This document shows, one piece after another, positions 7,550 to 47,294 of a stretch of DNA of 64,000 nucleotides. The position numbers and the translations under genes are program-made. The stretch covers positions 248,001 through 312,000 of the IMG/VR virus record IMGVR_UViG_3300050821_013430; one strand, written 5' to 3'. The notes beneath the pieces are model-generated. The model ran no database searches, was not told the DNA's origin, and saw only the letters and a list, made by a program, of their open reading frames with translations. Numbering within the stretch: the stretch's first letter is position 1; the number at the start of each line of letters is the position of its first letter.

Positions 7550-8644
7550 TTACTTGCCCCAGTTTATGCGGATTTCCTCGAAGGGCAAACCTAATACCAC
7601 ATCAGGCCCGACCCCCATAACGAAGGTGATCGCTTCCTCGAAAGAAACATTGGCTGCCCGTTGCACTCTCGCCACAGCGTTTTGCTCTGCTCTGGTCAAA
7701 TCTCTCCCGCCCCAAGTAGGAGCCACTACATTCGGCTCTTCCAATACACCCTCAAAACTGGTTTCGCCCTTTTCGTTATGGGGCCGGTGCTTCCAGGCGT
7801 GTTCTTCGCCTGATCCAGGTGGTAGGTGCTGAAACCCTTTGTTGATCTCGTGCTTCTTCTCGGAAGTGAAAGCGGCAGCCATATAGCCTTGCCGATATCC
7901 TGCATAGTCGATGTCGAATGGTGTCCCCACATACATCTCGTGATGCTGTTTGCGGGCGATATAAGCCTCTCGCGGACTGCCCCACTGATCCAAGTGAATG
8001 TCCTCGGTGCCATCTTGAAAGCCCTCTTGATAGGATTTGGAAGTGGCTAACTTCTCAAACCGAGCGGCAAGAGAAGCGGTCTTGGGCTCTTTGTATCTGC
8101 CAGTCGGGAATACTACCCCTAATATCATCCGACCACTATCTCGAAGTTCAAGAACAACGTCAATATGATCGCCGTAATGCCAAACGTGCTTTCTATGTGT
8201 GGCCACGGTGATGGGCGGAATAGCCTCGGTAATCACTTTGGAGAACTTCTTGAACTGATCCAGTTGCTGATCAGGCGTCAAAAAAGTCATCTCCGCTATC
8301 ATCGTCAGTTTATACGTATTGTCCGTAACAGGAGCGTCCTTGAAATGGAGGTCTGTTCCTATGGTGTTTATGCTCTTGAAATATCTGGTTAACCTATCGA
8401 ACAGGCTATATGGCGCCGAGGTATGGGCAGGCTGACGAGTAATGGGTTTTGGCTTCTCCGGCTCTTCTTTGCCTCCCCACATTTGAGCCCGCATCTTACA
8501 TTGACGACATACATAGTTCGGATCGGGATCCATATAGGGATTGTCGTAGCCGCACTCTTTGCAAACCGCAGTAGCGTTTTTGACAAGTGAAGAGGCCAGT
8601 TTATGGAAGAGAGCGGCGAGGGCGATCAGTCGTTCAGCGTTCAT
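7550..8644 (-). CDS. hypothetical multidomain protein (candidate virion/late protein)
   Basis: Start re-called to MNAERLIALA at 8644 to avoid overlap with the divergent Kelch gene; CKECG/CRQC zinc ribbon. Confidence 0.7.
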   Translation of the reverse strand: MNAERLIALAALFHKLASSLVKNATAVCKECGYDNPYMDPDPNYVCRQCKMRAQMWGGKEEPEKPKPITRQPAHTSAPYSLFDRLTRYFKSINTIGTDLHFKDAPVTDNTYKLTMIAEMTFLTPDQQLDQFKKFSKVITEAIPPITVATHRKHVWHYGDHIDVVLELRDSGRMILGVVFPTGRYKEPKTASLAARFEKLATSKSYQEGFQDGTEDIHLDQWGSPREAYIARKQHHEMYVGTPFDIDYAGYRQGYMAAAFTSEKKHEINKGFQHLPPGSGEEHAWKHRPHNEKGETSFEGVLEEPNVVAPTWGGRDLTRAEQNAVARVQRAANVSFEEAITFVMGVGPDVVLGLPFEEIRINWGK

Positions 8645-8688
8645 TTCCAAATGCCGAATTACGCATATCGGTTTTCCCGCATTCTTGT

Positions 8689-9588
8689 ATGACCTCTCCC
8701 CCTGCCGCATCCTATTGCCCCCTGGTTGATCAGCCTTCCGCCCAACAATTGGTGCTTTATAATCGAGCGATACCGGGCCCTGTTGAGTTTCCGCCCACTT
8801 CTGTTTGGGTATGGTCAGGCTCAAACTGGGCCGAGATAGTCAATCCCACCTTAGCCGATCGTGTCGATCCCCTCTTTGCCTATGATGGCATCAATGTCCT
8901 TCTTTATGGGGGTCAGAATAACTACTCCTTTACCACCGACCAAGAGACCTTTGACGGTCATAACTGGTCAGTCTCTTCCGCCATTCTTCCTCCCCCACGC
9001 ACTCGTGCTACTGGCACCTATATAGCCAGTTTAGACGAGGTGGTAATGGCCTTTGGCGAAAGTCAGAATATGCAGTTGAACGAAACCTGGGTCTTCCATC
9101 GGGGTACTCAAATATGGAAGCACGTGCACGTGCCTCAGCCCCCTTGGCGGACGGAAAGCCCAATGGCTTCGGATGGTATCAATGTGCTCTTGTTCGGAGG
9201 TCTGCCTGGTGTAGGGTTGCCCGTACTGGGAGATGTATGGAACTTCTCGAATGGGATATGGACTCAATTGAGCACTATCAATGTTCCGCCACCCCGTGCA
9301 GGTCATGGATTAGTGTTTGATACGGTAAGAAATCAGTTTGTTCTCTTTGGGGGTTATGATGGCACCGGACGATATTTCAACGATACCCATACTTTCGACT
9401 TCCACACTTTGACTTGGAAGCCATTGGAGCCTAACTTGTCTCCTACTCCTCGGGCAGGCATTAGTATGTGTTGGGATAGCACACGGAAGAATACGGTGGT
9501 TTGGGGCGGGGTTGATGGATCAGGAACGGTGTATAAGGATACCTTTCTCTGGGATGGGAATAATTACCTGCCCGTGCAAGGGATTTAG
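8689..9588 (+). CDS. Kelch-repeat beta-propeller protein
   Basis: Repeated LLFGG...TW/DVW...W...PPPR.GH units; N-terminus from MTSPP aligns with the next gene. Confidence 0.85.
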   Translation: MTSPPAASYCPLVDQPSAQQLVLYNRAIPGPVEFPPTSVWVWSGSNWAEIVNPTLADRVDPLFAYDGINVLLYGGQNNYSFTTDQETFDGHNWSVSSAILPPPRTRATGTYIASLDEVVMAFGESQNMQLNETWVFHRGTQIWKHVHVPQPPWRTESPMASDGINVLLFGGLPGVGLPVLGDVWNFSNGIWTQLSTINVPPPRAGHGLVFDTVRNQFVLFGGYDGTGRYFNDTHTFDFHTLTWKPLEPNLSPTPRAGISMCWDSTRKNTVVWGGVDGSGTVYKDTFLWDGNNYLPVQGI

Positions 9589-9631
9589 CCTACGCCTAAT
9601 TGAGCATATTAGCATACCCTAAGAGGCTTAT

Positions 9632-10585
9632 ATGACGACACTCGCTCCTTATCCTTGCGTTTTTGGCTCGTTGGTGGATTATCCAACATCATCAGTTCAG
9701 GTGCTCTATAATCCGAGCAATTATCCACGCACTAATTTCCTTGGTGGTAGCGGATCGGTCTGGTCATATAACGGAACAGCCTGGACACAGTTTGCTGGTT
9801 CTGGCCCCGCTGGAACAATCCCGAGCGATCGCACTGGTCAAACAATGTCCCAGGACGGTACGAACTTGGTTCTCTTCGGAGGTGAAGGAACTATCGCCTA
9901 TCTCGGAGACACTTGGAAAGGAACCAACTCTTCTTGGAGCCAAAGCACTGCAACTTGGTTTGGTACTGCTCCGTATCCCCGTACTAACTGCCAAACAACT
10001 TACCTCTCAGGGACACCAACGGTCGTCTTATTCGGAGGCGCTTCTCAATCTTTCGTCAATCAAGAAACCTGGACTTGGACGTCTTCTAACGGCTATTGGA
10101 CTAACCTTGGTCTTGCCAGCACGGCGCAACCTCCTTGGCGACAATATGCCTGCTTCGCGGCCGATCCAACTCACGCCATCTTATTTGGAGGACAAGGCAA
10201 TGGCAATCAGGTCTTTCAGGATACCTGGCAATTTTCAGGTGGTCTATGGAGTGATTTGAACACCATCAATACTCCCTCAGCCAGATGGGGAGCGTCCTTC
10301 GTCTATGACAGTACCAACAGCCTTTTCACTATGTTTGGAGGGTGTCAGATCAGCAATAGCGTTCCGCTCAACGAAACTTGGGTATTCAATCTGGGTACAT
10401 TGACCTGGACTAACTTGTCCGCTGGACTAACCAATGCCCCAAGTGCTCGATATGGCGCCTCGGCTTGCTGGGATAGTACGCATCACAAGATGTTGCTCTT
10501 CTCTGGTGCAAACCAAGATGGATTACTACCGGACTTTTGGACATTCTCAGGTGGGCTTGCAGGGACTTGGGTACAGGTCTTCTAA
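9632..10585 (+). CDS. Kelch-repeat beta-propeller protein
   Basis: Repeated VLFGG...DTW...W...PSAR.GA units. Confidence 0.88.
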   Translation: MTTLAPYPCVFGSLVDYPTSSVQVLYNPSNYPRTNFLGGSGSVWSYNGTAWTQFAGSGPAGTIPSDRTGQTMSQDGTNLVLFGGEGTIAYLGDTWKGTNSSWSQSTATWFGTAPYPRTNCQTTYLSGTPTVVLFGGASQSFVNQETWTWTSSNGYWTNLGLASTAQPPWRQYACFAADPTHAILFGGQGNGNQVFQDTWQFSGGLWSDLNTINTPSARWGASFVYDSTNSLFTMFGGCQISNSVPLNETWVFNLGTLTWTNLSAGLTNAPSARYGASACWDSTHHKMLLFSGANQDGLLPDFWTFSGGLAGTWVQVF

Positions 10586-10605
10586 GAAACCCAAATCCCA
10601 ATAAC

Positions 10606-10899
10606 CTACTCGTAGATCGTTTCTAACTCTACCGTTCTCAGATGAGCCAATAATCGTTCCAATTCCTTCCTCACAGTATCGAAACTGGTGAAAGGCTTTT
10701 GATCGCCATAATCAGCATATAGGCTGGCCAAACTATCGAGGGAACTCATGGCTTTGTCCAAATTTTGGATGACATTGCTCTTGGCGATCTCGGCTTGTTG
10801 TCCCGGGGGAGGGCCGAAGGAAGGTCTGGTATCAATCTGACTTGGCATTTGGGCATATTTGGCTTGGAAACGTTCGGCGAGAGAGGCAATCTTGGTCAT
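10606..10899 (-). CDS. hypothetical protein with N-terminal IASLAERF helix
   Basis: ORF; GACAT-N6-ATG upstream. Confidence 0.7.
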   Translation of the reverse strand: MTKIASLAERFQAKYAQMPSQIDTRPSFGPPPGQQAEIAKSNVIQNLDKAMSSLDSLASLYADYGDQKPFTSFDTVRKELERLLAHLRTVELETIYE

Positions 10900-10917
10900 A
10901 TGGAAATGTCGGGATAT

Positions 10918-11256
10918 TCACCAACACTCATCCAGCACCTCTTCTACATTGACTTCCTTGTAATCCCAGGCCCGTTGCACCCAATTTGGAAGCCTATCCC
11001 ACTCATCGCCATGAATAGTGAGGGTATTGGTAGGAGCAATCGCCATAGCCAACTTCTTGCCATCAAAACTACCCCAATAGAAGATGTAGCAATAGTCTTT
11101 GCCAGTTAGTCGAGCGGCAATTAGGGCATCCACCAATTCCTTGCCAGTATATGGGGAAGGGTATAGGAGTTGTTTCTCTCGGTTAGGATAGTAGCCATTG
11201 TAGATGGCCCCGATTTCACCTTGACCATTGATGCGAATGAAGAAAGGGGTCACCAC
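10918..11256 (-). CDS. hypothetical protein
   Basis: ORF coupled to rnhB. Confidence 0.65.
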   Translation of the reverse strand: MVTPFFIRINGQGEIGAIYNGYYPNREKQLLYPSPYTGKELVDALIAARLTGKDYCYIFYWGSFDGKKLAMAIAPTNTLTIHGDEWDRLPNWVQRAWDYKEVNVEEVLDECW

Positions 11257-11903
11257 TTCACCATACTCTTTACTGGCTCGTACGAAACCCGATGCAAAGG
11301 CGTTGCTCCATATTTCTTCAACGCGGCCTTATGGTCTTTTGTCCCATATCCCGAATTTTCGGCCCATCGATACTCAGGATGTAATTGTCCCCAAATTGCC
11401 ATCCTTCCATCTCGATAGCATTTGGCCAGAATTGAGGCTGCCATCACCTGGGGAACGAAGTTATCGGCCTTGGGCAACCATCTGACATCGGTCATATTGG
11501 CGGGAGGCTCTCCCTTGGGTCGTGCTCCGTCTATAATGAGATATGAAGAGGTTTTGAGGTCGGTTTGGGCCTTGGCTACCATCGTACCAATCGCCTCGCT
11601 AAACGCCTCTGAGAGGCATTGAGTAATACCGTAATGGTCAATATGGAGATTAGAGCGCTCTGCAATGGCAAAGCCTATCTCTCTCCGTTCATATGCGGCT
11701 CCGATAATTGCTCGCATTTCTTCTCGACGCTTCTTGGAAAGAGCCTTGCTATCGTTGAGACCCTCTAATGTCCAGGATTTAGGGGCAAGAATGGCACAAC
11801 AAACACACGGGCCTGCAAGTGCGCCCGTACCGACATCATCCGCCCCTATCACCCAATCCTGAGTAATATGACTAAGTTCTTCTTCCCATCGTTTATCCAT
11901 CAT
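11250..11903 (-). CDS. rnhB: ribonuclease HII
   Basis: IGADDVGTGALAGP, LNDSKAL, IIDG, KADN...MAASILAKCYRD, GYGT..H...GATPLHRVSY. Confidence 0.92.
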   Translation of the reverse strand: MMDKRWEEELSHITQDWVIGADDVGTGALAGPCVCCAILAPKSWTLEGLNDSKALSKKRREEMRAIIGAAYERREIGFAIAERSNLHIDHYGITQCLSEAFSEAIGTMVAKAQTDLKTSSYLIIDGARPKGEPPANMTDVRWLPKADNFVPQVMAASILAKCYRDGRMAIWGQLHPEYRWAENSGYGTKDHKAALKKYGATPLHRVSYEPVKSMVKW

Positions 11904-12100
11904 CGGTGATCCAATCCGCATTGTTGACAGCAGCCAGAAAGACCTGAGCCGTTGCAAACGGGACAAGTTCGGGCTCCGACATTCTCAGGTTCGTTGTAAT
12001 CGAGATATTGCTCCTGACCTTCACCACCACAATTGGAACAGGCGCCAGGCGGAAAAATGGTCTCGCTCTTTTCGATCAATTTCCAATCGAAGTCTCTCAA
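11900..12100 (-). CDS. CPQCG-tag family variant (DnaJ-like CxxCxGxG body)
   Basis: CSNCGGEG...CPVCNGSG...CQQCGLDHR*; probable TTG start overlapping the upstream stop. Confidence 0.6.
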   Translation of the reverse strand: MRDFDWKLIEKSETIFPPGACSNCGGEGQEQYLDYNEPENVGARTCPVCNGSGLSGCCQQCGLDHR

Positions 12101-12300
12101 TGGGTTTCTCCGCATTGAGGACATCGTTCTACTACGACAAAGCGTAATTGGCTATAACTGCCTGGCAGCCCACTGATCTTGTAGTCGGGGTTGTGCACTT
12201 CTGCGTCATACACCTGTCCCAAAACCAGTTGCATCTCCTTATCGAAGTATTCCGGCGAGGCATTGAACCTGTTGGAGACATCAATGCACTTGACTTTCAT
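12097..12300 (-). CDS. CPQCG-tag family, MKVKCID type
   Basis: MKVKCID...LGQVY...RFVVVERCPQCGETH*. Confidence 0.8.
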   Translation of the reverse strand: MKVKCIDVSNRFNASPEYFDKEMQLVLGQVYDAEVHNPDYKISGLPGSYSQLRFVVVERCPQCGETH

Positions 12301-12482
12301 GGATGTATCTCTCCACATTGGGAACAAGCATTACTCGGCACAATTTGGAAGCGGTGCTTGAACCACCACCCAGCACCTTTCAAATGATAACCATCACCGT
12401 ATTCAGAAATCACTTCATAAACCCTGCCTTCAAATAATGGCATACGAATACAATCACACCCTTCTACACACTTGACTTTCAT
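12297..12482 (-). CDS. CPQCG-tag family, MKVKCID type
   Basis: MKVKCVE...GRVYEV...WFKHRFQIVPSNACSQCGEIHP*. Confidence 0.8.
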   Translation of the reverse strand: MKVKCVEGCDCIRMPLFEGRVYEVISEYGDGYHLKGAGWWFKHRFQIVPSNACSQCGEIHP

Positions 12483-12697
12483 TAGTGAGTTTCTCCGCAT
12501 TGAGGACAACGCTCGCCCTCTTTGACTATCACGAAACGGTTGCTACGCCACCAATCAGACAAACCTATTAGGTGGTACATCGTCATATTGAGGGTGGAAG
12601 AGTGGTATGCGCTAAGCACTTCATACTCTTTGTCTATTACGAGATCGCTTTTCTGATCCAGATCGCCCGGAGCAGCATCTATACATCTAACTCTCAT
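12482..12697 (-). CDS. CPQCG-tag family, MKVKCID type
   Basis: MRVRCID...KEYEV...RFVIVKEGERCPQCGETH*. Confidence 0.8.
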   Translation of the reverse strand: MRVRCIDAAPGDLDQKSDLVIDKEYEVLSAYHSSTLNMTMYHLIGLSDWWRSNRFVIVKEGERCPQCGETH

Positions 12698-12966
12698 TGA
12701 TGTACCTCTCCACATTGATGGCAACGAGACTTCTTCGCGAAGGCTTCCAATTCGGCAATGATGCCTTTATTGAACCACCAACGAGGTAATTGGTTATCAT
12801 CCCTAACTATATCCAAAGCGCCCCACGCACGGGTGGCGAAGTCCTGATGCCATTGTGCTAAGGTAGAGAAACACTTAGCACACCAGAGATACCAGTCTTC
12901 ACTGGTGTAGTTTTTGGTTCCGGGCATTGATATGCCGCAACACTTGCAATTAGCCATCTTTTCCAT
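12694..12966 (-). CDS. CPQCG-tag family, CxxC-CxxC type
   Basis: CKCC...CAKC...CHQCGEVHQ*. Confidence 0.8.
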   Translation of the reverse strand: MEKMANCKCCGISMPGTKNYTSEDWYLWCAKCFSTLAQWHQDFATRAWGALDIVRDDNQLPRWWFNKGIIAELEAFAKKSRCHQCGEVHQ

Positions 12967-13002
12967 CTACAATCACACCTATGGGTTATTTCGCATCCTG
13001 AT

Positions 13003-13563
13003 ATGTCCGCCAAGTTATCCAAACTAAGCCGGAAACTGCTCCTAAAATGGGCGATGAAACTCAACATCTCCGACGCCCCCTACTATTCACCAGTCCCAAA
13101 GGGAGAGGAATGGGGGAAGTTGGAAACCGGCTCAGATCCTCTTTTACCAGTCGCGCCTTCTACCGCGCCATCCCTTTTAGACCTGTTGAAATCGAAGGCT
13201 ACCCAGATATACACGGAGGGCAATACCCTTCGGATCTACTTGGAAGCCGCGGGCGGAGAAGATGACCACGGCCCGCAACGGCAAACCCCATCTAAACGCC
13301 ACCTACTGATGAAAGAGGCAGCCAGAGAGGTCGTTAGAGCCATTACTGAGGTGGCCGATATTCTCAATGCGATAAGGAAAGGCGATCATTCCGTTGATGA
13401 TCTGGCTGCGAAAGCCAAAAGCCTTTGGAAACTGACCCAAACGCTAATGGCCAAAGAGTATTCCTTAGAGATGGAAGAGTTGGAACGGTTTCATCTCTAT
13501 CTTGAACAGTTCCTTGGACTATTGAGTAGTATCGTTGAATATGAGGATTACAAGGAGTTCTAA
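13003..13563 (+). CDS. hypothetical protein with N-terminal amphipathic helix
   Basis: ORF; GCAT-N6-ATG upstream, no SD. Confidence 0.7.
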   Translation: MSAKLSKLSRKLLLKWAMKLNISDAPYYSPVPKGEEWGKLETGSDPLLPVAPSTAPSLLDLLKSKATQIYTEGNTLRIYLEAAGGEDDHGPQRQTPSKRHLLMKEAAREVVRAITEVADILNAIRKGDHSVDDLAAKAKSLWKLTQTLMAKEYSLEMEELERFHLYLEQFLGLLSSIVEYEDYKEF

Positions 13564-16100: not shown

Positions 16101-16280
16101 TTAGGCGGACTTGCTAAACAAGCCCATAACCGCAGTCCATGCCTTTTTGAGAGCACTGACAACAAATTGAACTGGCACCATAACGGTGTTGAGGGCAGCC
16201 TCGACAACGGGAAGTCCCGCCATCAAATGCATGGCAAACGCGCCAACAACACAGCCTACGACGAATGATAATAGCGACAT
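16101..16280 (-). CDS. small hydrophobic/amphipathic protein (59 aa)
   Basis: Manual translation MSLLSFVVGCVVGAFAMHL...; GGAG SD. Confidence 0.6.
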   Translation of the reverse strand: MSLLSFVVGCVVGAFAMHLMAGLPVVEAALNTVMVPVQFVVSALKKAWTAVMGLFSKSA

Positions 16281-16339
16281 GATATTCTCCTTCTGAACTG
16301 ACTTACCCGTTCAGAGAAGATGCGCTATTATGCCCCAAT

Positions 16340-19334: not shown

Positions 19335-19604
19335 TCAGTGTTTTTCTCCGCACTGAGGGCAATTTTCTTCGGCTATCAGTTTTTTGAGGGCCTCATAGAA
19401 CTCATCGCCATCTTCGAGAACGAAAGAGTAGAGAGACTGCGTTTTGAGATCGTTCCATAGGCTGCCCCCAACGACTTCACGGACTCGATAAGCACACGGC
19501 CCACATACCACGCCAATGAACGATTTTGGATCGAAGACAAGTCTATAATGGTAAGACCATCCCTCGGTCAGTAGTTTGCGACAAAGAGGACACTTATAGT
19601 CCAT
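19335..19604 (-). CDS. CPQCG-tag family, CxxC-CxxC type
   Basis: MDYKCPLC...CGPC...CPQCGEKH*. Confidence 0.8.
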   Translation of the reverse strand: MDYKCPLCRKLLTEGWSYHYRLVFDPKSFIGVVCGPCAYRVREVVGGSLWNDLKTQSLYSFVLEDGDEFYEALKKLIAEENCPQCGEKH

Positions 19605-19848
19605 GTCGTTCTCCGCACTGAGGACAATATCCGAGTTTGATCCTGGCCTTGTATAAGGCACTAACGAAACTTGGGCTTCCCCCATCCACACAGAAAGTCC
19701 ATCCTGCTTCCGTACCCGCATACCACTCAGCATGGAACGGCTCTCCCTTTTCCCGATACACCAATTCAGCGCAGGACAGGCATGTAATCCCAATATTAGC
19801 ACCTATTTCCCTGGGTATTGAACATTGACACAAGAAACACTTAGACAT
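19594..19848 (-). CDS. CPQCG-tag family, CxxC-CxxC type
   Basis: CFLC...CLSC...CPQCGERHGL*. Confidence 0.8.
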   Translation of the reverse strand: MSKCFLCQCSIPREIGANIGITCLSCAELVYREKGEPFHAEWYAGTEAGWTFCVDGGSPSFVSALYKARIKLGYCPQCGERHGL

Positions 19849-20029
19849 GCACTTCTCCGCATTGAGGGCAAGGCTCTTCCACTACCTCAAAGCGAGTTTT
19901 GGCCCAGCACAATCGCTTATTCTCGACCAATTCATAGTGGTTTTTGTGCTCTACTGCGACCGTATAAACTACGGTCATACCGAGAGTGCCGTGGCCAAAC
20001 CCACGATCATTGATGCATCTTACCTTCAT
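19841..20029 (-). CDS. CPQCG-tag family, MKVKCID type
   Basis: MKVRCIN...RFEVVEEPCPQCGEVHV*. Confidence 0.8.
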   Translation of the reverse strand: MKVRCINDRGFGHGTLGMTVVYTVAVEHKNHYELVENKRLCWAKTRFEVVEEPCPQCGEVHV

Positions 20030-20286
20030 AGGTGTTTCTTTCCGCACTGAGGACAATTGCCGTTCTTTCTGCTTTGCAGAATATCCAACACCGCCTTATC
20101 CAAAGGCGAGTCGCCGTTATAGCCAGTTGCTCCGTATTGTCGATACATTCCCGGTAGTCCTAATTTACTTACTGCTTGAACAGCAGGATGTTGATAGGCA
20201 ATTTCAGCACAAGGAATGCAAAGAAACTTAGAACAGCCACTAAGCGCCGTATGTACTTCGATTCTGCATATCTCGCAGTTATTCAT
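20026..20286 (-). CDS. CPQCG-tag family, CxxC-CxxC type
   Basis: CEIC...CIPC...CPQCGKKHL*. Confidence 0.8.
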   Translation of the reverse strand: MNNCEICRIEVHTALSGCSKFLCIPCAEIAYQHPAVQAVSKLGLPGMYRQYGATGYNGDSPLDKAVLDILQSRKNGNCPQCGKKHL

Positions 20287-20473
20287 GTCGCTCTCCACAT
20301 TGGGGACAACCATTCTCTGGCACCTCTACAAAACGCCACTTGAAAAAGACCCAATGCGGATTTCCTAACTCATAGCAATCAGATCGGCTATAATTGGAGC
20401 GAGTTCGATATACCTGGCCCAAAACAAGCCATCCACTGATATCGCCGCTTACATCAATGCACTTGACTCTCAT
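20279..20473 (-). CDS. CPQCG-tag family, MKVKCID type
   Basis: MRVKCID...LGQVY...RFVEVPENGCPQCGERHE*. Confidence 0.8.
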   Translation of the reverse strand: MRVKCIDVSGDISGWLVLGQVYRTRSNYSRSDCYELGNPHWVFFKWRFVEVPENGCPQCGERHE

Positions 20474-22112: not shown

Positions 22113-22167
22113 ATGCCACTATAATGGCATACCACTATGTATGGGCCCTTATAAAGAAGGCAAATGA

Positions 22168-25042: not shown

Positions 25043-25081
25043 TGGGAAGTTCTTTCGTTGGTGTTAGGATGGCATTGAGGT

Positions 25082-25357
25082 ATGCAATTGGAAGCAATTC
25101 AGGAGTTGGCCAATCGGTTCTGCAAACTGGCCATCCATAACTACTATGCGAATGATGGACTGAGCGCCGAGGATCGGAACGAGATCGATCTCTCGATGGC
25201 GAATGACAAGCATTATCCGTCGTGGGTGGCAGACCGCAAAATCTGGGATCGGGCGAAAAAGAAGGTCAATAAGGTATGGAAACGGTACAAGAATCCGTAC
25301 AAGATCATATCGACAATCTACTTTTCGATGCACGGGACAAAGAAAAAGGCTAAGTAG
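25082..25357 (+). CDS. hypothetical protein with N-terminal amphipathic helix
   Basis: Isolated + strand gene; GCAT-N6-ATG upstream. Confidence 0.7.
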   Translation: MQLEAIQELANRFCKLAIHNYYANDGLSAEDRNEIDLSMANDKHYPSWVADRKIWDRAKKKVNKVWKRYKNPYKIISTIYFSMHGTKKKAK

Positions 25358-26281: not shown

Positions 26282-26524
26282 TTAGAGGCCTTCTAACCAG
26301 GCCAATACTTCCTTCAATTTCCCCTCTAACTCAACCAGTTTCTCTTTGGAGAATTTGCCGGGATTACTCTCGTAATCGGTCAAGGCCTCGTGCAGTTTCA
26401 ATGCTCGGCGCCCAATCTTCTCTAAAAGGTGGGAGTTTCGATTGATCAGGGAAAAGAGGTCGGTGCGGGGAGGGAGGAGTTTCTCTTCCATTCGTTGGGC
26501 CAGGGCTAAAAGATTGGACTTCAT
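26282..26524 (-). CDS. hypothetical protein with N-terminal amphipathic helix
   Basis: GACAT-N7-ATG upstream, no SD. Confidence 0.65.
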   Translation of the reverse strand: MKSNLLALAQRMEEKLLPPRTDLFSLINRNSHLLEKIGRRALKLHEALTDYESNPGKFSKEKLVELEGKLKEVLAWLEGL

Positions 26525-26542
26525 AGAGGAAATGTCGAAGTA

Positions 26543-26833
26543 TTACTTGCGCTTTTTGCGTCCATCCGAGTATGCTTCGGGGTCTGCCCGACTGACATAG
26601 CCTGGGACGGACATCGCTTCATCCGCTTCTTTGACGCACTTGATGGCTAACTCGGTCATTTCCTTATTGACCTCTTTTTGAGCGGCTTTTAGGAAGGCCT
26701 TCTTTTCAGCAGGAAGCAATTCGTCCCAAGCCATTCGGAGAGCACGCATCTCGATCTTCATCTGAGTGAGATCGGTAATGCTTGGCGGGCTACCCAAAAG
26801 AGTCCGCGACCCCATATCTTTTCCGTCTTTCAT
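26543..26833 (-). CDS. hypothetical protein
   Basis: ORF. Confidence 0.6.
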   Translation of the reverse strand: MKDGKDMGSRTLLGSPPSITDLTQMKIEMRALRMAWDELLPAEKKAFLKAAQKEVNKEMTELAIKCVKEADEAMSVPGYVSRADPEAYSDGRKKRK

Positions 26834-30230: not shown

Positions 30231-30398
30231 TCAATTCCTCAATACTGTTGCTCTACTATCAGGCCCACAAGGGCATTCGAGTTGTAATTCGTCGTTCCTA
30301 ATGTCTTCGATGTCGTTTTCATCCTCAAACTCAACGGCGAAGATGGTACCGCACTCGGAGCACTTGAAAGTGAACTTTTGTCTCTTGGTCTCTAACAT
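30231..30398 (-). CDS. small zinc-ribbon protein (55 aa)
   Basis: Manual translation ...FKCSECGT...LECPCG. Confidence 0.55.
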   Translation of the reverse strand: MLETKRQKFTFKCSECGTIFAVEFEDENDIEDIRNDELQLECPCGPDSRATVLRN

Positions 30399-30412
30399 AC
30401 CAAGATGCCGAG

Positions 30413-30562
30413 TTATTGAACGGCGAAGCCCTTCCTTCGGCTCGGTCTATTGTTGAGCAGATATTGAGTCCAACACTTAGGGCATCCGTCTACGAAAGTA
30501 CGCGTGGGCACCGGCAGGCGCTTGGCTCTGTATTTCGGATGGGTTTTACACTTGGCTTTCAT
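30413..30562 (-). CDS. small hypothetical protein (49 aa)
   Basis: MKAKCKTHPKY...GCPKCW; SD lies inside the upstream tag. Confidence 0.5.
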   Translation of the reverse strand: MKAKCKTHPKYRAKRLPVPTRTFVDGCPKCWTQYLLNNRPSRRKGFAVQ

Positions 30563-32663: not shown

Positions 32664-33493
32664 TACTCTAAGCATTGGAAAGTAGTCGCAAACTTCATCC
32701 AAGCATCGGGAGTGATGAGCGACTTGAAACCCATTCTCTCAAACTCTTTCCTGAGTTGGTGGAAATTGGTTTGTCCCTCTTCCACAATCAGATCATCCAA
32801 AGGGATAGACCTCAATTCAATTAGGTAGCGATTGATGGCGAAGTTGGCTCGGTTTTCTTCGATTGACATCCATTGCTCGAAGAGAGTAGGATTGGCCAGC
32901 ATTTTGAGAGCGGTCTTTTTGCCTACTAAGGAAGGTATGTTATCAGCCGTATCGCCATAAAGGGATTTCCCCGCCACCACCGGATGAGACGGGGGTTTGA
33001 CGAAGACCTTTTTGATGGGGTTGTAGATTTTGACCTGATGTCCCAATTGGGGGACTTGGAGCAGATCACTATCGTTGCTAACGACGGTTAGATCTTCCCC
33101 TTGGAGGTTTTCCACCAGTGTGAGCACTACATCATCCGCTTCCGAAGCGTCATGACGGACGCGAGTAATCGGAAGGTGCTGGACGGAATTGAGTGCTTCG
33201 TTCTTGGACAAGCGGAAACGATCTACTTCCTTTTGCGTCTTGGAAGCGATCTTGACTAAGCGATTGGCTTTGTAGCCGGGGTAAGCGTCTCTACGAAACT
33301 GAGGATCTCCTTCGAGAACAAGGAAGCATTTATGGGGTTGAAACTGCTCAATGAGAAGTCGAAGACTACGGAAGAAATTGAACACTGCCACATAGCGAGT
33401 ATCGATCGGATTCAATTCGTCAGGTTTAGACTTGAAAGCGACCTGCGCGCGCCATAAGAGGTTGTAAGTATCGAGGATAAGTATGCGATCCAC
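32660..33493 (-). CDS. 5'-3' exonuclease / flap endonuclease (T4 RNase H/Pol I 5' domain-like)
   Basis: ILILDTYNLLWRA, YPGYKANR, EADDVV, SNDSDLLQ, GDTADNIP..VGKKTA. Confidence 0.92.
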   Translation of the reverse strand: MDRILILDTYNLLWRAQVAFKSKPDELNPIDTRYVAVFNFFRSLRLLIEQFQPHKCFLVLEGDPQFRRDAYPGYKANRLVKIASKTQKEVDRFRLSKNEALNSVQHLPITRVRHDASEADDVVLTLVENLQGEDLTVVSNDSDLLQVPQLGHQVKIYNPIKKVFVKPPSHPVVAGKSLYGDTADNIPSLVGKKTALKMLANPTLFEQWMSIEENRANFAINRYLIELRSIPLDDLIVEEGQTNFHQLRKEFERMGFKSLITPDAWMKFATTFQCLEY

Positions 33494-33496
33494 CTA

Positions 33497-33775
33497 TCAA
33501 TGCGTGGATAGGCATTGGAGGCAGAAATCGGGATTGACGGTTTTAGCCTGCTCCCATATGCTCTCCCAGCGTCCGTAGTGCTCGCACACATTGGTGAAGT
33601 AGTTGCTGCTATTATGACTCCCGCCACCATCGTCTGCGATATTCGCCTTACGATGGCAGATCAAGCACCGCACAGGCACCTTGATCAAAACGCACCTGGT
33701 GTCGCGAGAATAGCCCTCTCGTCCCGCACTTCTGATCACATCCTCGCCAAGCCAAAAGTCTTGCGTTTCCATCAT
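33497..33775 (-). CDS. CPQCG-tag family, METQ type (degenerate tag CLQCLSTH)
   Basis: METQDF...PVRCLIC...CEHY...FCLQCLSTH*. Confidence 0.75.
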   Translation of the reverse strand: MMETQDFWLGEDVIRSAGREGYSRDTRCVLIKVPVRCLICHRKANIADDGGGSHNSSNYFTNVCEHYGRWESIWEQAKTVNPDFCLQCLSTH

Positions 33776-42246: not shown

Positions 42247-42446
42247 TGAGAGTCCTTATTGCGACCAGCGATCGCCATTACGAAGGATGCTACCACCATC
42301 ATTGGGGAGAAGAGCCAGAGCAACACTCTGGGGGACAAAGGCGCCTTACCTTCGGTCTGATGCGAGGGCAAGAACACCAATGCTCCCCAGAGATAGGAAG
42401 AGAGGAGGAACACGAACAGAGTGAGTCGTAGCAGAGTATGGATCAT
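42243..42446 (-). CDS. small membrane protein
   Basis: Two TM segments. Confidence 0.55.
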   Translation of the reverse strand: MIHTLLRLTLFVFLLSSYLWGALVFLPSHQTEGKAPLSPRVLLWLFSPMMVVASFVMAIAGRNKDSQ

Positions 42447-44396: not shown

Positions 44397-44416
44397 ACTC
44401 TAAGACCCTTTCCTAA

Positions 44417-44590
44417 TCAACGACCACAATGATATCCACACCCACACTTTCCGTTGCGACAATAGACCTTCTCGGCCCAAAAGTGCCAAGACCGCGGGTG
44501 CTTACACTCCGTACAGACCTCTCCTTTCGAGAAGCCAAAGCGCCACCATAACCACCAAGCATAGTGTTGCAAGTCGCGATACCAGTTCAA
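44417..44590 (-). CDS. small Cys-rich protein
   Basis: CTECKHPRSWH...C..GKCGC; probable TTG start inside upstream tag stop. Confidence 0.5.
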   Translation of the reverse strand: MNWYRDLQHYAWWLWWRFGFSKGEVCTECKHPRSWHFWAEKVYCRNGKCGCGYHCGR

Positions 44591-44850
44591 TGCACATCCC
44601 CACACTGAGTGCAGCGACTACTAATTGCTTCCTTCACTCTTCCTTCGTTCCAATTATCCCACCCCGTATATCCATGTTCCAAATTGGTATCATCAATTGA
44701 TGGTATCCATAGGCTATGACCAGCCTTGCTTATGGCCTGCTTGTAGATAAGGCAGCAGGCTTTACACATCACAATGTGCTTGCTGGTGGTATAATGCCCT
44801 GGCCTACATATCACGCTCTGCTTACAATGCAGGCACTTATGCTCGTTCAT
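44587..44850 (-). CDS. CPQCG-tag family, CxxC-CxxC type
   Basis: CLHC...CKAC...CTQCGDVH*. Confidence 0.78.
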   Translation of the reverse strand: MNEHKCLHCKQSVICRPGHYTTSKHIVMCKACCLIYKQAISKAGHSLWIPSIDDTNLEHGYTGWDNWNEGRVKEAISSRCTQCGDVH

Positions 44851-45038
44851 TTCTTCCCACCTTCCAAAGTCTTCTCCAACTTGTTGCACCCCTGCCGTAT
44901 CATCAGCAGTTGCTCTCGGATAGTCTTGTCGTCTGACTTATTGAGCAGGGTAGAAGAGGTCATCTCCAATACTCGTTTCAGGTCGATCAACATCTTGCCC
45001 TTCTCGGTCAGTCCGTACTCTTTCTCTTCGACTTCCAT
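44847..45038 (-). CDS. hypothetical protein
   Basis: Coupled ORF. Confidence 0.6.
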   Translation of the reverse strand: MEVEEKEYGLTEKGKMLIDLKRVLEMTSSTLLNKSDDKTIREQLLMIRQGCNKLEKTLEGGKK

Positions 45039-45039
45039 C

Positions 45040-45285
45040 TTAGTGCCTCTTTCTGCATTGGGGACAGATCTCAGCCAGAATCTTGTCTACTTGATCACTG
45101 AAACAACCACCGGAGCGCACGAATGTGAACCAATCTTGGGTAAGTATACTCGCATATCCTATCCCGTGCTTATCGTCTAACCCTTTATAGACTTCCACTG
45201 CACAGGCAGGGCAAACAACACCTGTCGTTGATTGGTTTGCGGGCGGGTGTACGAGTTTTAGACACATCTCACACGACTTTTCCAT
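45040..45285 (-). CDS. CPQCG-tag family, CxxC-CxxC type
   Basis: MEKSCEMC...CPAC...CPQCRKRH*. Confidence 0.8.
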   Translation of the reverse strand: MEKSCEMCLKLVHPPANQSTTGVVCPACAVEVYKGLDDKHGIGYASILTQDWFTFVRSGGCFSDQVDKILAEICPQCRKRH

Positions 45286-45287
45286 TG

Positions 45288-45536
45288 TCAGTGTACCTTT
45301 CGACATTGAGGACAAGTCTTCCCAATCATCCTGTCTACCTGGCCAGCAAACTTCGGGGAGCTATTACTGAACGACCACCAATTACCCTCTGATTCGTGCT
45401 GAGCGTCCGAGGCACCTTCTTCGTCTCCTATCTCACGATAGACTTCCGCCGCACAATCAATGCAGAGCATACGATGCTTCATTTGGTTGGCGGACGGATG
45501 GACTATTCTCAAACAGAGTTCGCACGGCTTTTCCAT
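45288..45536 (-). CDS. CPQCG-tag family, CxxC-CxxC type
   Basis: MEKPCELC...CIDC...CPQCRKVH*. Confidence 0.8.
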   Translation of the reverse strand: MEKPCELCLRIVHPSANQMKHRMLCIDCAAEVYREIGDEEGASDAQHESEGNWWSFSNSSPKFAGQVDRMIGKTCPQCRKVH

Positions 45537-45545
45537 CTCTTCACC

Positions 45546-45746
45546 TCAGTGTTGAATGCCACATTGCGGACAGGAGCCGGGCGCAAGCACTGTAAAGTGC
45601 CAGGCATAGTACCACGCTAATAGGCCCAGGTTATTGATCAGTTGATAATCACCCACATTGTCGGGGTTCGATACCGTATAGACCTTCCCCACGGTCAACT
45701 TGTTCTCATCTACACCAGTGGTGTTGATGCACTTGACTTGCTTCAT
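45546..45746 (-). CDS. CPQCG-tag family, MKVKCID type
   Basis: QVKCIN...LTVGKVYTV...CPQCGIQH*. Confidence 0.8.
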   Translation of the reverse strand: MKQVKCINTTGVDENKLTVGKVYTVSNPDNVGDYQLINNLGLLAWYYAWHFTVLAPGSCPQCGIQH

Positions 45747-45759
45747 TCAGTCTCTCTTC

Positions 45760-46017
45760 TTAGTGTTTCAGACCACACTGCGGACAATGGCCACGCTTGA
45801 TGCGTAGTATTTCCAGCCCTTCGGCAATGTTCTTGCTAGTCTTGTCGAAGTCCCACCATCCCTCAGTGTCTCTCTCGGCACGGTCTCGTCTTTCGCGATC
45901 CCCCACTTCCACATAGGCATCTACGGCGCAAGTAGTACACACCACTCGTCGTGTAAGAACTTCCACGCGCGAAGGACATTCCAATACCTTCGAACACAAT
46001 TCACAGTGTCTTGTCAT
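45760..46017 (-). CDS. CPQCG-tag family, CxxC-CxxC type
   Basis: CELC...CTTC...CPQCGLKH*. Confidence 0.8.
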   Translation of the reverse strand: MTRHCELCSKVLECPSRVEVLTRRVVCTTCAVDAYVEVGDRERRDRAERDTEGWWDFDKTSKNIAEGLEILRIKRGHCPQCGLKH

Positions 46018-46040
46018 TGTCTTTCCTCCTCGATTGAGGG

Positions 46041-46253
46041 TTAGTTAGAAGTCTTCGGCGGGCCCCAACCAGAATCGATATGCTTCAACTCTTCGTGTTG
46101 GTATTGCTCGGGAGTATACCCACAGCGTTTCAACCACTCTACATACTTATGGTAGTAGGCAGCCGCTTCGTGATAATCCTTGGCCATCGCCATCTGACTA
46201 ATCAGGGCATCGGCTCGTTCGGATACGAAGTGATATGGGAGTTTAGCGGCCAT
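46041..46253 (-). CDS. hypothetical protein
   Basis: GCAT-N6-ATG upstream. Confidence 0.6.
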   Translation of the reverse strand: MAAKLPYHFVSERADALISQMAMAKDYHEAAAYYHKYVEWLKRCGYTPEQYQHEELKHIDSGWGPPKTSN

Positions 46254-46264
46254 ACCACTATGCC

Positions 46265-47260
46265 TTATTCTGCGCAGCGATTGATCCTCTCTACCGCTTC
46301 CTGCAAGGTTTTAGCCTCCACCGCCAAATTGATCCTGATATGGCCTTCCTTACCGAAGTGCTTTCCATCTGGCACTGAAATCTTGGCCGCTTTCAGAACA
46401 TCCGGTCTCTTGCATTGTACGAAGGCGAACATTCCGGGCTGTTCCGGCAAATCCTTGGGAATATCCAAAACGGTTGGATTGATCTTGACCAAGGTTTTCT
46501 TGGCTTCTTTCAAGGCGTGCCGAGCATCAGCCTCAAAGGCTAACTGCTTCTCGGGACATTCCTGCATAGCCCGTAGCAGGCCGTAAACGGCCTTCTGAGA
46601 GGCAATTGAGACCCCGACCGTGGTCATCTCCACATACTCACGGATAAGCCCGTAGAAGTCAGAATTGGGGCATACGGCCCATCCTACTCGGAGGCCGGAT
46701 AATCCCAGATATTTGGAAGCGCTGAATAGTTGGATATCACCGATTGGGGGTAGAGGATAATCGGCGGGAAGATAGAGATGGTTGTAATAGACCGCATCGT
46801 GAATGAGCGGCACACCCTCGAAAGCCCATTCTCTTTCTGAGGTATCAAGTGAATTGTCTGGATTATTAGGTAGCACCAATAGTTGAGCATCAGAAGGCAA
46901 AAGGGGATCAAACTCGCAAGTAAGACCGTGGCAGTGCATCACGGGCGGAAGCAAACACCAATAGATCGGGCCCAGTCCGATCGATCTTTTGCCCATCTTA
47001 TGCAGGGCATACGCTATACTTCCGAGACCCTGCTTGGCTCCGTTGGTAATCACAACCGGAGCCTTATACTGCTCTTCCAAAAGACCGACCAATGGTTTAT
47101 AGCCAGAGGGATCGGGATACTCATACTCGTGGTCAGTGAGTTTGTAGAAGGGAAACTCGAAGTGTTTGGACAAGGCTTGCCGGACTAAAACCGCTTCACC
47201 AACTGATAAGTCTATCCAATCAGCGGGCAGTTTTGGTTTGGCAAGGAGCATGTCGGTCAT
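46265..47260 (-). CDS. PLP-dependent aminotransferase class I/II
   Basis: IDLSVGE, ITNGAKQGL, PNNPD, HDAVY, SASKYLGLSGLRVGW, GHIRINLA. Confidence 0.9.
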   Translation of the reverse strand: MTDMLLAKPKLPADWIDLSVGEAVLVRQALSKHFEFPFYKLTDHEYEYPDPSGYKPLVGLLEEQYKAPVVITNGAKQGLGSIAYALHKMGKRSIGLGPIYWCLLPPVMHCHGLTCEFDPLLPSDAQLLVLPNNPDNSLDTSEREWAFEGVPLIHDAVYYNHLYLPADYPLPPIGDIQLFSASKYLGLSGLRVGWAVCPNSDFYGLIREYVEMTTVGVSIASQKAVYGLLRAMQECPEKQLAFEADARHALKEAKKTLVKINPTVLDIPKDLPEQPGMFAFVQCKRPDVLKAAKISVPDGKHFGKEGHIRINLAVEAKTLQEAVERINRCAE

Positions 47261-47294
47261 ATAAGGATGTCGGAAAGTTAGCGGGCCTCAATAC

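What the first reader, a model, noticed from the sequence alone, without database searches (positions are those of the whole stretch)
8642..47270. G(A)CAT-N6/7-ATG motif at mostly SD-less gene starts: candidate phage late promoter making leaderless mRNA
Seen upstream of eight genes outside the coupled blocks: 8644(-) taattcgGCATttggaaATG; 8689(+) ttttcccGCATtcttgtATG; 10899(-) aatatcccGACATttccatATG; 13003(+) ttatttcGCATcctgatATG; 25082(+) taggatgGCATtgaggtATG; 26524(-) aatacttcGACATttcctctATG; 46253(-) aataagGCATagtggtATG; 47260(-) aactttccGACATccttatATG. A ninth, ataatgGCATaccactATG at 22137(+), precedes a 5-codon ORF upstream of the LAGLIDADG gene. Apart from a GAGG only 1 nt from the ATG at 25082, these starts lack an SD. 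Established: a -10-type element lies about 6-7 nt upstream of the transcription start, so this spacing would put +1 on the A of ATG. Inference: a phage sigma factor or RNAP recognises this element and makes leaderless transcripts. The 8644/8689 pair forms a back-to-back divergent promoter in 44 bp.
Basis: partly seen in the sequence, partly recalled or inferred. Interest (0 to 1): 0.68.

Follow-up and report, generated by a model that had tools for sequence, protein, structure and literature searches.

The report
Huge-phage late promoter abutting start codons
The short GCAT signal in front of several genes is the end of a real 12-base promoter-like element (ATAAT-N3-GCAT), conserved in a clade of uncultured 350-470 kb phages that carry their own sigma factor; in about a third of its copies it sits so close to the ATG that the mRNA probably starts at the start codon.

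Summary
The window is part of a 472,749-bp uncultured phage genome.

**What the motif is.**
- About 45 copies occur genome-wide.
- It is 18 times denser in sense-oriented upstream DNA than in other noncoding DNA.
- It is conserved in relatives of 31% and 48% GC.
- It lies upstream of the major head, tail sheath, tail fibre, baseplate and lysis-type genes, so it looks like a late promoter.

Five of the nine fit well. Two are weak (8689, 46253). Two are probably chance (25082, 47260). Two more start-abutting copies (30398, 33493) were missed.

**Distance from CAT to the start codon.** It falls into two groups.
- At 6-8 nt there are 17 sites, and 16 lack an SD.
- At 14 nt or more there are 24 sites, and 22 have an SD.
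- In long-leader copies, the 6th and 7th bases after CAT show a pyrimidine-purine start-site signature. This is exactly where the A of ATG sits in the short class.

**Transcription machinery.** A 209-aa sigma-70-family gene is conserved across the clade. No phage RNA polymerase was found.

**A second promoter class.** An extended -10-like GATATA element also abuts ATGs, at N8-10, in all three genomes.

**Limits.** No RNA data could be obtained, so the transcription start and the sigma assignment are inferences.

The parts
8651..8662 (-). Class A promoter-like element (ATA block plus GCAT), 6 nt upstream of the ATG at 8644 (364-aa protein, no family hit). It is the best-scoring copy in the window.
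   Evidence: 18.2 bits; sequence read; no Pfam hit for the gene.
8671..8682 (+). Weak class A copy: GCAT is present but the ATA block is replaced by TTTT. It lies 6 nt upstream of the ATG at 8689 (299-aa Kelch-repeat protein) and is the back-to-back partner of 8651-8662.
   Evidence: 10.7 bits; Kelch domains.
10906..10917 (-). Class A element 6 nt upstream of the ATG at 10899 (97 aa).
   Evidence: 13.9 bits.
12985..12996 (+). Class A element 6 nt upstream of the ATG at 13003 (186 aa), in a divergent intergenic region.
   Evidence: 13.1 bits; the nearest upstream neighbour is on the opposite strand.
26532..26543 (-). Class A element 7 nt upstream of the ATG at 26524 (80 aa). The TAA stop of the upstream gene lies 3 nt upstream of the motif's T-A core.
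   Evidence: 13.5 bits; upstream stop at -11 from the C of CAT.
30405..30416 (-). Class A element 6 nt upstream of the ATG at 30398 (55 aa).
   Evidence: 13.9 bits.
33500..33511 (-). Class A element 6 nt upstream of a GTG start at 33493 (277 aa), in a divergent intergenic region.
   Evidence: 12.1 bits.
22119..22130 (+). The ATG 6 nt after CAT opens only a 5-codon mini-ORF.
   Evidence: 13.3 bits. An ATG at this spacing in 3 of 28 long-leader copies is near chance (about 0.9 expected).
9596..9607 (+). Class A element with a 24-nt leader containing an SD, before the ATG at 9632 (317 aa).
   Evidence: 12.5 bits.
16320..16331 (-). Class A element with a 39-nt leader containing an SD (AAGGAG), before the ATG at 16280 (59 aa).
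   Evidence: 15.6 bits.
46260..46271 (-). Borderline copy before the ATG at 46253 (70 aa). GCAT is present but the A/T block is out of register.
   Evidence: 9.8 bits, below my 10.5-bit cut-off.
47267..47278 (-). It has the GACAT core only and is probably not a member.
   Evidence: 2.6 bits; Pfam.
25064..25075 (+). It has the GCAT core only, the ORF is uncertain and a GAGG lies next to the ATG. Probably not a member.
   Evidence: -2.0 bits.

Best explanation
**What it is.** The element is a clade-specific late promoter of a huge phage that relies on host core RNA polymerase.

**Anatomy.** It has two blocks on the coding strand, ATA(A/T)T and GCAT, separated by 3 nt. No conserved -35 was found.

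**Proposed mechanism.**
- Transcription most likely starts at the purine 7 nt (sometimes 8 nt) downstream of the T of CAT. This puts CAT at -9 to -7 and the ATAAT block at -18 to -14.
- The most likely reader is the phage's own 209-aa sigma-70-family factor.
- Where the gene's ATG occupies the start position (17 of 45 copies; seven in this window), the mRNA has no leader and no SD. It would be translated by the leaderless route.
- Where the start codon is 14 nt or more downstream, the leader carries a normal SD.

**What is shown:** the motif, its orientation, its placement and conservation, the late-gene association, the two-group spacing with the SD split, and the presence of the sigma gene.

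**What is inferred:** the exact start site, leaderless translation, and which factor reads the motif.
For: **1. A real, oriented element.** Matrix hits of 12 bits or more:

| DNA class | Hits | Size |
|---|---|---|
| sense-upstream noncoding | 28 | 17.6 kb |
| other noncoding | 4 | 45 kb |
| coding, sense | 9 | 442 kb |
| coding, antisense | 15 | 442 kb |

. Starting from ATAAT or ATAAA alone, with no CAT required, the base 6 nt downstream is A in 40 of 60 upstream-region occurrences.

**2. It works where a new transcript must begin.** Several copies sit in divergent intergenic regions. The upstream stop codon coincides with the motif's TAA/TAG triplet in only 8 of 48 hits.

**3. Conservation.**
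- Upstream of tail-sheath genes that are only 50-56% identical, dozens of IMG/VR relatives keep AATA-N6-CAT in the same register.
- Two relatives (31% and 48% GC) carry the motif before orthologous and other genes.

**4. Late genes.** Downstream genes include the major head protein, tail sheath, tail fibres, a baseplate protein and an endolysin-like peptidase.

**5. Spacing.**
- The pattern ATA-N6-CAT lies 6-7 nt from the start far more often than placement at random allows:

| Genome | Observed | Significance |
|---|---|---|
| this phage | 10 of 46 (1.9 expected) | p = 1.4e-5 |
| relative G001 | 5 of 27 | p = 0.006 |
| relative G003 | 3 of 16 | p = 0.03 |

- No matrix site lies at 0-5 or 9 nt.
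- SD split: 16 of 17 short-spacing sites lack an SD, and 22 of 24 sites at 14 nt or more have one.

**6. Independent start-site signature.** In 29 long-leader copies (21 nt or more, three genomes), the 6th base after CAT is a pyrimidine in 23 of 29 (p = 0.002). The 7th is a purine in 21 of 29, and G rises from 2 to 10. With leaders of 12 nt or more, the 7th base is a purine in 34 of 44 (p = 4e-4).

**7. Evolutionary flexibility.** One orthologue keeps CAT-N6-ATG in G001. Another has the motif at 8 nt in G001, and at 34 nt with an SD in G003.

**8. Machinery.**
- One sigma-70-family gene with regions 2 and 4, 49-60% identical in 5 of 5 relatives.
- No Rpb2_6 or T7-type polymerase hit and no NADFDGD motif.
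- In the HMMER alignment to solved sigmas, the positions that read the -10 element in SigA/RpoS are substituted. This fits a non-TATAAT specificity, but the evidence is weak.

**9. Precedent in the same genomes.** The canonical extended -10-like GATATA class abuts ATGs at N8-10 in all three genomes (p = 2e-6, 1e-3 and 1e-7). Start codons at the transcript's 5' end therefore seem to be normal practice here.
Against: - No RNA 5' ends could be examined; none was listed for this phage.
- The ATAAT block resembles a TATAAT -10 hexamer, and CAT is the classical start-site triplet. A conventional reading would therefore start transcription inside CAT.
- With the start at the ATG, the base at -11 is C or G rather than the near-universal A. 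This is unusual for a sigma-70-family promoter.
- Purine-rich SDs in short leaders could inflate the purine signal; it weakens to p = 0.024 when only leaders of 21 nt or more are used.
- The same signature test on the GATATA class, used as a positive control, was not significant, so the test is not sensitive.
- Four copies at 10-13 nt have neither an SD nor a 5'-terminal start codon, which neither model explains.
- The sigma gene itself has a class A-like motif 28 nt upstream. The sigma therefore cannot be the only route to its own expression.
- In the window itself the downstream genes have no known function, so 'late' rests on copies elsewhere in the genome.
- Gene starts come from a home-made caller.
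Confidence: 0.55

Rival explanations
1. Conventional geometry. ATAAT is an ordinary -10 hexamer read by the host primary sigma or a close mimic. Transcription starts at the A or T of CAT, the classical C-A-T start triplet. The short class then has an 8-9 nt SD-less leader rather than none.
For: - ATAAT matches 5 of 6 positions of TATAAT, and the A of CAT lies 6 nt after it, within the normal start window.
- In two SD-led copies the SD begins at the 6th or 7th base after CAT, which sits more comfortably inside a longer leader.
- In the tail-sheath promoter, GATATA occupies the ATAAT position.
Against: - The position equivalent to T-12 is T in only 1 of 28 long-leader copies, and the equivalent of T-7 is less conserved than the T-A two to three positions upstream.
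- GCAT is near-invariant, far more than a start-site preference usually is.
- A fixed 8-9 nt leader has no known rationale, whereas a zero-length leader explains the sharp peak and the empty 0-5 nt bins.
- The pyrimidine-purine signature lies 7 nt after CAT.
- In the GATATA class the ATG sits at the canonical start distance.
Confidence: 0.25
2. An RNA-level signal rather than a promoter. Either it is a processing site for a phage or host endoribonuclease that trims transcripts to the start codon, or it is a termination-reinitiation signal between adjacent genes.
For: - Many copies lie just after an upstream same-strand gene. In 8 of 48 hits the upstream stop codon is the motif's TAA/TAG triplet.
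- No -35 element is seen.
Against: - Copies occur in divergent intergenic regions with no upstream same-strand gene (8644/8689, 13003, 33493 and several outside the window).
- The distance to the start codon varies from 6 to about 70 nt, which rules out a fixed coupling signal.
- The association with late genes and the conserved two-block DNA-like architecture fit a promoter better.
Confidence: 0.07
3. Chance. A 4-5 base word at a loose spacing, picked out by eye from A/T-rich intergenic DNA.
For: - The bare pattern is only mildly enriched genome-wide. GCAT-N6-ATG occurs 86 times against about 65 at neighbouring spacings.
Against: - Flanking positions that were never selected are conserved.
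- There is a strong orientation and location bias.
- The spacing peak recurs in three genomes.
- The motif is conserved in relatives of very different GC content.
Confidence: 0.03

Closest known systems
Phage T4 late promoters (TATAAATA, read by the gp55 sigma-family factor with gp33 and the sliding clamp)
   Same: A phage-encoded sigma-family protein redirects host core polymerase to a short element near -10, with no -35, in front of virion genes. (This rests on my own knowledge of T4; jumbo-phage sigma and gp33 usage is summarised in PMC7824862.)
   Different: - The sequence is unrelated, and the element here has two blocks.
- The sigma here has region 4, which gp55 lacks.
- T4 late mRNAs have SD-bearing leaders.
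- No gp33 or clamp dependence was tested here.
Bacillus phage SPO1 sigma cascade (gp28; gp33/gp34)
   Same: Small phage-encoded sigma factors replace the host sigma to switch temporal classes. The SPO1 late -10 (GATATT, recalled from memory) resembles the second promoter class found here (GATATA).
   Different: SPO1 promoters are bipartite (-35 and -10). No -35 was found here. No sequence relative of this sigma was found in cultured phages.
Bacillus jumbo phage AR9 late promoters, AACA-N6-T-A/G(+1)
   Same: A 4-nt element whose C-A sits at -9/-8, followed by 6 nt and a pyrimidine-purine start (PMC5312081). This is the geometry that G/A-C-A-T-N6-A takes if transcription starts at the ATG.
   Different: - AR9 uses its own multisubunit polymerase on uracil-containing DNA. 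No such polymerase was detected here.
- AR9 5' UTRs are 26-491 nt and none is leaderless.
Leaderless mRNAs of Actinobacteria and some phages (lambda cI from PRM; Thermus phage P23-45 middle/late genes)
   Same: A -10-type element lies 6-7 nt upstream of an A/GTG that is both the transcription start and the start codon, with no SD (mycobacteria: PMC4633059, listed but not read). P23-45 middle/late promoters are of the extended -10 class (PMC7403470). That their transcripts are leaderless is my recollection, not checked here.
   Different: Here the arrangement sits in a phage that otherwise uses a strong AAGGAG SD. It occurs with two different promoter classes, and one of them has a non-TATAAT element.
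Bacillus phage G, the nearest cultured relative
   Same: Huge myovirus. Its portal is 34% identical. It also has a large expansion of small zinc-ribbon proteins (PMC7824862; 43 CPQCG-type copies here).
   Different: The relationship is very distant: the tail sheath aligns over only 18% of its length. Phage G's group is reported to lack sigma factors, whereas this clade has one.

Membership tests
Sigma-70-family-dependent promoter | A cognate sigma factor is available | tested here: met
   A 209-aa protein matches Sigma70_r2 (27 bits, above cut-off), Sigma70_r4 (22.2 bits, just under its 24.1-bit cut-off) and TIGR02937 (61.8 bits). It is conserved in 5 of 5 relatives. Host sigmas are also available by default.
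Sigma-70-family-dependent promoter | A -10 element with A at -11 and T at -7 relative to a mapped start | tested here: inconclusive
   No start site is mapped. If transcription starts at the ATG, T-7 and A-8 are invariant but -11 is C or G. If it starts in CAT, the ATAAT block fits positions -11 to -7 but T-12 is absent (1 of 28).
Sigma-70-family-dependent promoter | A -35 element, or an extended -10 TG in its place | tested here: not met
   No position from -40 to -14 relative to the C of CAT exceeds 0.35 bits. An A/T block lies where an extended -10 would be.
Leaderless mRNA | The primary 5' end coincides with the first base of the start codon | not testable with these tools
   No RNA run was listed for this sequence.
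Leaderless mRNA | A promoter element at a fixed short distance from the start codon, and no SD | tested here: met
   17 sites lie at 6-8 nt, and 16 of them have no SD. The spacing peak is significant in three genomes.
Leaderless mRNA | The start codon is AUG (GUG is tolerated in some hosts) | tested here: met
   15 ATG and 2 GTG among the 17 short-spacing sites. This does not differ significantly from the genome-wide 79% ATG among the first 543 calls.
Phage late promoter | Lies upstream of virion and lysis genes | tested here: met
   Major head, tail sheath, tail fibres, baseplate and endolysin-like peptidase. It also precedes homing endonucleases and genes of unknown function.
Phage late promoter | Active late in infection | not testable with these tools
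   The phage is uncultured and no time-course data exist.
Phage-encoded RNA polymerase promoter (T7-like or phiKZ/AR9-like) | The phage encodes such a polymerase | tested here: not met
   - PF00562 and PF00940 gave no hit. For PF00940 the control genomes also gave nothing, so that negative is weak.
- The single weak Rpb1_2 hit is a 146-aa protein without catalytic motifs.
- No NADFDGD-type motif occurs in any frame.
Sigma-54 promoter (GG -24 / GC -12) | GG about 10-11 bp upstream of the GC, with the start 12 nt after the GC | tested here: not met
   The position 10-11 bp upstream of the GC is the A/T block, and the GC would lie at -10/-9.

The most novel reading that the evidence does not exclude
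A whole clade of uncultured 350-470 kb phages (portal distantly like Bacillus phage G) may combine two unusual things.
- Its own sigma factor would read a non-canonical late promoter, with GCAT at -10 to -7 plus an ATAAT block at -18 to -14 and no -35.
- About a third of all its promoter-proximal genes would be built as leaderless mRNAs. This covers both the late class and the extended -10-like GATATA class. All other genes use a strong SD.

This would make leaderless translation a deliberate, conserved expression strategy of huge phages rather than an oddity of a few genes.
Probability: 0.4. Interest if true: 0.65.

Novelty: new variant of a known kind. Interest (0 to 1): 0.55.

Why it matters
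- **Annotation.** Gene expression in huge uncultured phages is almost unknown. This gives a concrete, testable promoter grammar for a large clade: dozens of IMG/VR contigs, several of them 350-450 kb. It allows late genes and true start codons to be called among hundreds of unknown ORFs.
- **Sigma specificity.** If the sigma assignment holds, it adds a sigma-70-family specificity that lacks the usual A at -11.
- **Translation.** If the leaderless reading holds, a phage that uses a strong SD for most genes also relies widely on 5'-terminal AUG initiation. This says something about its still unknown host's ribosomes and could be a means of temporal or stress-linked translational control.
- **Practical use.** The 44-bp back-to-back pair at 8644/8689 is a compact natural test fragment.

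Tried and rejected
**Searches that found nothing**
- RNA evidence: one search for sequencing runs holding window 8000-13500 listed none.
- Close relatives by DNA in cultured phages: no match.
- Relatives of the 364-aa protein at 8644: none in IMG/VR.
- The sigma has no match in cultured phages at E up to 1e-5.

**Explanations rejected**
- Phage RNA polymerase: see the membership test.
- Reinitiation or stop-codon artefact: the upstream stop coincides with the motif in only 8 of 48 hits, and several sites are in divergent regions.
- Bacteroidetes-type TAnnTTTG -7 box: the motif resembles it superficially. However, the third T is usually G or C, and the genome uses a strong SD.
- Sigma-54 and sporulation-sigma or sigma-28 consensus sequences recalled from memory: the spacing or key bases do not fit.

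**False positives and weak tests**
- PWM hits on the + strand at window 12104-12115 and similar places are antisense to a repeated CPQCG zinc-ribbon codon string, not promoters.
- The pyrimidine-purine start-site test applied to the GATATA class as a positive control was not significant. The test is therefore insensitive, and the class A result should be read with that in mind.

**Not attempted**
- Host identification.
- The large protein-homology searches, which were not needed for the claim.

Full report
**Context.** The window is bases 248,001-312,000 of a 472,749-bp IMG/VR virus record rated complete. It is about 50% GC. With my own hexamer-based caller it has about 760 genes, most of them on the minus strand. 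AAGGAG-type Shine-Dalgarno (SD) sequences are strongly enriched 9-13 nt before starts. No cultured phage matches at the DNA level. The portal is 34% identical to that of Bacillus phage G, and the tail sheath matches phage G only in its C-terminal fifth. The tail sheath also has 46 IMG/VR relatives at 46-56% identity, several of them on 350-450 kb contigs.

**Checking the observation.** Genome-wide, the bare pattern GCAT-N6-ATG is only mildly enriched (86 against about 65 at other spacings). At gene starts the enrichment is clear.
- 24 called starts carry G(A)CAT-N6/7. 21 of them are among the 364 SD-less starts.
- Among SD-less ATG starts with at least 10 nt of intergenic DNA, CAT peaks at spacing 6 (13) and 7 (5), against a background of about 2.

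**The motif is longer than described.** Aligning the sites on CAT reveals conserved flanks that were not part of the selection. The element is A-T-A-(A/T)-T at -9 to -5 and G-C-A-T at -1 to +2, counted from the C of CAT. GACAT is the same register with G at -2. As a check free of that selection, ATAAT or ATAAA anywhere in an upstream region is followed 6 nt later by A in 40 of 60 cases.

**It behaves as a promoter.**
- Matrix hits of 12 bits or more number 28 in 17.6 kb of sense-oriented upstream noncoding DNA and 4 in 45 kb of other noncoding DNA. In 442 kb of coding sequence there are 9 sense and 15 antisense hits.
- The element also lies 10-70 nt upstream of many genes that have ordinary SDs. 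It is therefore not tied to the ATG.
- It is not a by-product of stop codons or a coupling signal. The upstream stop coincides with the motif's TAA/TAG triplet in only 8 of 48 hits, and several copies sit in divergent intergenic regions. One of these is the 8644/8689 pair, whose two copies (8651-8662 minus, 8671-8682 plus) fill the 44 bp between the ATGs.

**Conservation.**
- Upstream of tail-sheath genes in dozens of relatives, the string GGAATATTAATA-CAT-TTTAATGAT aligns in register with this phage's GGGATATACCCG-CAT-TTTAGCGAT.
- I fetched 400 kb each of two relatives, G001 (31% GC) and G003 (48% GC). Both carry ATAAT-N3-GCAT-type elements before structural-region genes and before orthologues of this phage's class A genes.

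**Which genes it drives.** Class A copies precede the major head protein, tail sheath, tail fibre proteins, a tail-fibre-assembly-like protein, a baseplate protein and an endolysin-like metallopeptidase. They also precede homing endonucleases and genes of unknown function. This supports 'late'. In the window itself the downstream genes are uninformative: a Kelch-repeat protein, an alliinase-like enzyme (the site at 47260, which fails the matrix anyway) and several with no hit.

**Spacing and SD.** Among 45 curated sites, the distance from CAT to the start codon splits as follows.

| Distance from CAT to start | Sites | With an SD | Start codons |
|---|---|---|---|
| 6-8 nt | 17 | 1 | 15 ATG, 2 GTG |
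| 10-13 nt | 4 | 0 | 3 ATG, 1 GTG |
| 14 nt or more | 24 | 22 | 24 ATG |

No site lies at 0-5 or 9 nt. I repeated the test with the unbiased pattern ATA-N6-CAT, using as null every noncoding position upstream of a gene. The 6-7 nt bin then holds 10 of 46 sites (1.9 expected, p = 1.4e-5) in this phage. It holds 5 of 27 (p = 0.006) in G001 and 3 of 16 (p = 0.03) in G003.

**Where does transcription start?** No RNA run was listed, so this rests on sequence logic.
- In long-leader copies, where no ATG constrains the sequence, the 6th base after CAT is a pyrimidine in 23 of 29 (p = 0.002). The 7th is a purine in 21 of 29, with G rising from 2 to 10 (three genomes, leaders of 21 nt or more).
- With leaders of 12 nt or more, the 7th base is a purine in 34 of 44 (p = 4e-4), and C occurs once.
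- This is the usual -1/+1 signature, and it falls where the A of ATG lies in the N6 class.
- Together with the empty 0-5 nt bins and the SD split, this favours a start 7-8 nt after CAT. That means leaderless mRNAs in the short class.

**The main rival for the start site.** ATAAT may be a normal -10 hexamer with transcription starting inside CAT, which would give an 8-9 nt leader.
- Against it: the T-12 equivalent is almost never T (1 of 28), GCAT is near-invariant, and a fixed 8-9 nt leader has no rationale.
- It is not excluded. My signature test was not significant on the GATATA class used as a control.

**Machinery.**
- The genome encodes one sigma-70-family protein of 209 aa at genome 2112-2741, minus strand. 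It matches Sigma70_r2 above its cut-off, Sigma70_r4 just under its cut-off (22.2 against 24.1 bits), and TIGR02937 at 61.8 bits.
- It is 49-60% identical in 5 of 5 relatives, about as conserved as the tail sheath. It has no match in cultured phages.
- Its nearest solved relatives are SigB, SigA and RpoS. In that alignment the residues that read the -10 element are substituted, which is weak support for a non-TATAAT specificity.
- A second protein of 159 aa, next to a Toprim-like gene (domain not scanned), has a sigma-region-4/LuxR-type helix-turn-helix.
- No phage RNA polymerase was found.
- Assigning class A to the phage sigma is an inference. The sigma gene itself has a class A-like motif 28 nt upstream.

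**A second promoter class.** (C/T)GATATA(T) is the most enriched intergenic word in this phage (37 upstream regions against 6 expected) and in both relatives. It looks like an extended -10 element (G at -14, then TATA). It precedes a PhuZ-like tubulin, the portal, RuvC-like and exonuclease genes, a transposase and others. Its distance to the start peaks at 8-10 nt, which is the canonical -10-to-start distance.

| Genome | GATATA sites at 8-10 nt | p |
|---|---|---|
| this phage | 12 of 41 | 2e-6 |
| G001 | 8 of 35 | 1e-3 |
| G003 | 11 of 26 | 1e-7 |

. Start codons at the transcript's 5' end therefore appear to be common practice in this clade.

**Comparison with known systems.**
- The closest functional analogues are phage late promoters read by phage sigma-family factors (T4 gp55, SPO1 gp34).
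- For geometry, the nearest is the AR9 late promoter AACA-N6-T-A/G(+1) (PMC5312081).
- For leaderless expression, the nearest are Actinobacteria and some phages.
- No described consensus that I could find or recall matches ATAAT-N3-GCAT. A review of jumbo phages places phage G's group among those without sigma factors (PMC7824862).

**Verdict.** The promoter reading is well supported. The late-gene association is supported genome-wide. The leaderless reading is the best explanation but is unproven. The sigma assignment is plausible only. I rate this a new variant of a known kind, of moderate interest.

Noticed in passing
window 5692(-), 6803(-), 44672(-); genome-wide, e.g. genome 36914, 44760, 49978, 142684, 157403, 244687, 316594, 336483: A second promoter-like class, (C/T)GATATA(T), resembles an extended -10 element. 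It is the most enriched intergenic word in this phage and in two relatives. About 30% of copies lie 8-10 nt from an SD-less ATG in all three genomes.
   Followed up: yes
window 2548, 12123, 12326, 12508, 12723, 19361-20308 (five copies) and further copies up to window 58009; 43 copies over genome 203,810-390,998, all on the minus strand: A repeated 17-mer (TGTCCTCAATGCGGAGA, up to 3 mismatches) encodes C-P-Q-C-G. This indicates a large lineage-specific expansion of small zinc-ribbon proteins, like the roughly 35-copy expansion reported for Bacillus phage G (PMC7824862). Its antisense strand gives false hits with the promoter matrix.
   Followed up: partly
relative G001, loci L086-L088 (first 60 kb of the contig): A third, very specific motif, CCCATC-N3-TAACGG, occurs in 27 copies. 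Most lie with TAACGG 15 nt before an SD-less ATG. It is absent from this phage (0 matches). It may be an early-gene promoter or an RNA signal of that relative.
   Followed up: partly
genome about 138,853-139,332, minus strand (L027:1360-1839:-): A 159-aa protein with a sigma-region-4/LuxR-type helix-turn-helix lies directly downstream of a Toprim-like gene (judged by eye, not scanned). It is a candidate second transcription factor.
   Followed up: partly
genome about 2742-2790, upstream of the sigma gene (L002:1801-1850, minus strand): The sigma gene itself has a class A-like element (ATAACGAAGCAT) 28 nt before its ATG. This hints at autoregulation, or at a different reader for the motif.
   Followed up: no
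About 0.9 would be expected by chance, so this may mean nothing.
   Followed up: partly
Each has its own class A or class B promoter.
   Followed up: partly
L004:11815-13173:- (genome 11,815-13,173): A 453-aa protein weakly matches phage tubulin PhuZ (E = 4e-9) and lies behind a GATATA promoter.
   Followed up: no
L041 (IMGVR_UViG_3300021407_000383, 221 kb): A second IMG/VR contig carries a tail-sheath gene 100% identical to this phage's. It is probably the same phage from another assembly or sample.
   Followed up: no
genome about 282-425 kb (window from about 34,000 onwards): This region has almost no class A or class B promoters (one class A, three GATATA copies). My codon-usage model also called its genes poorly. 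It may have a different composition and a different, unidentified expression signal.
   Followed up: no
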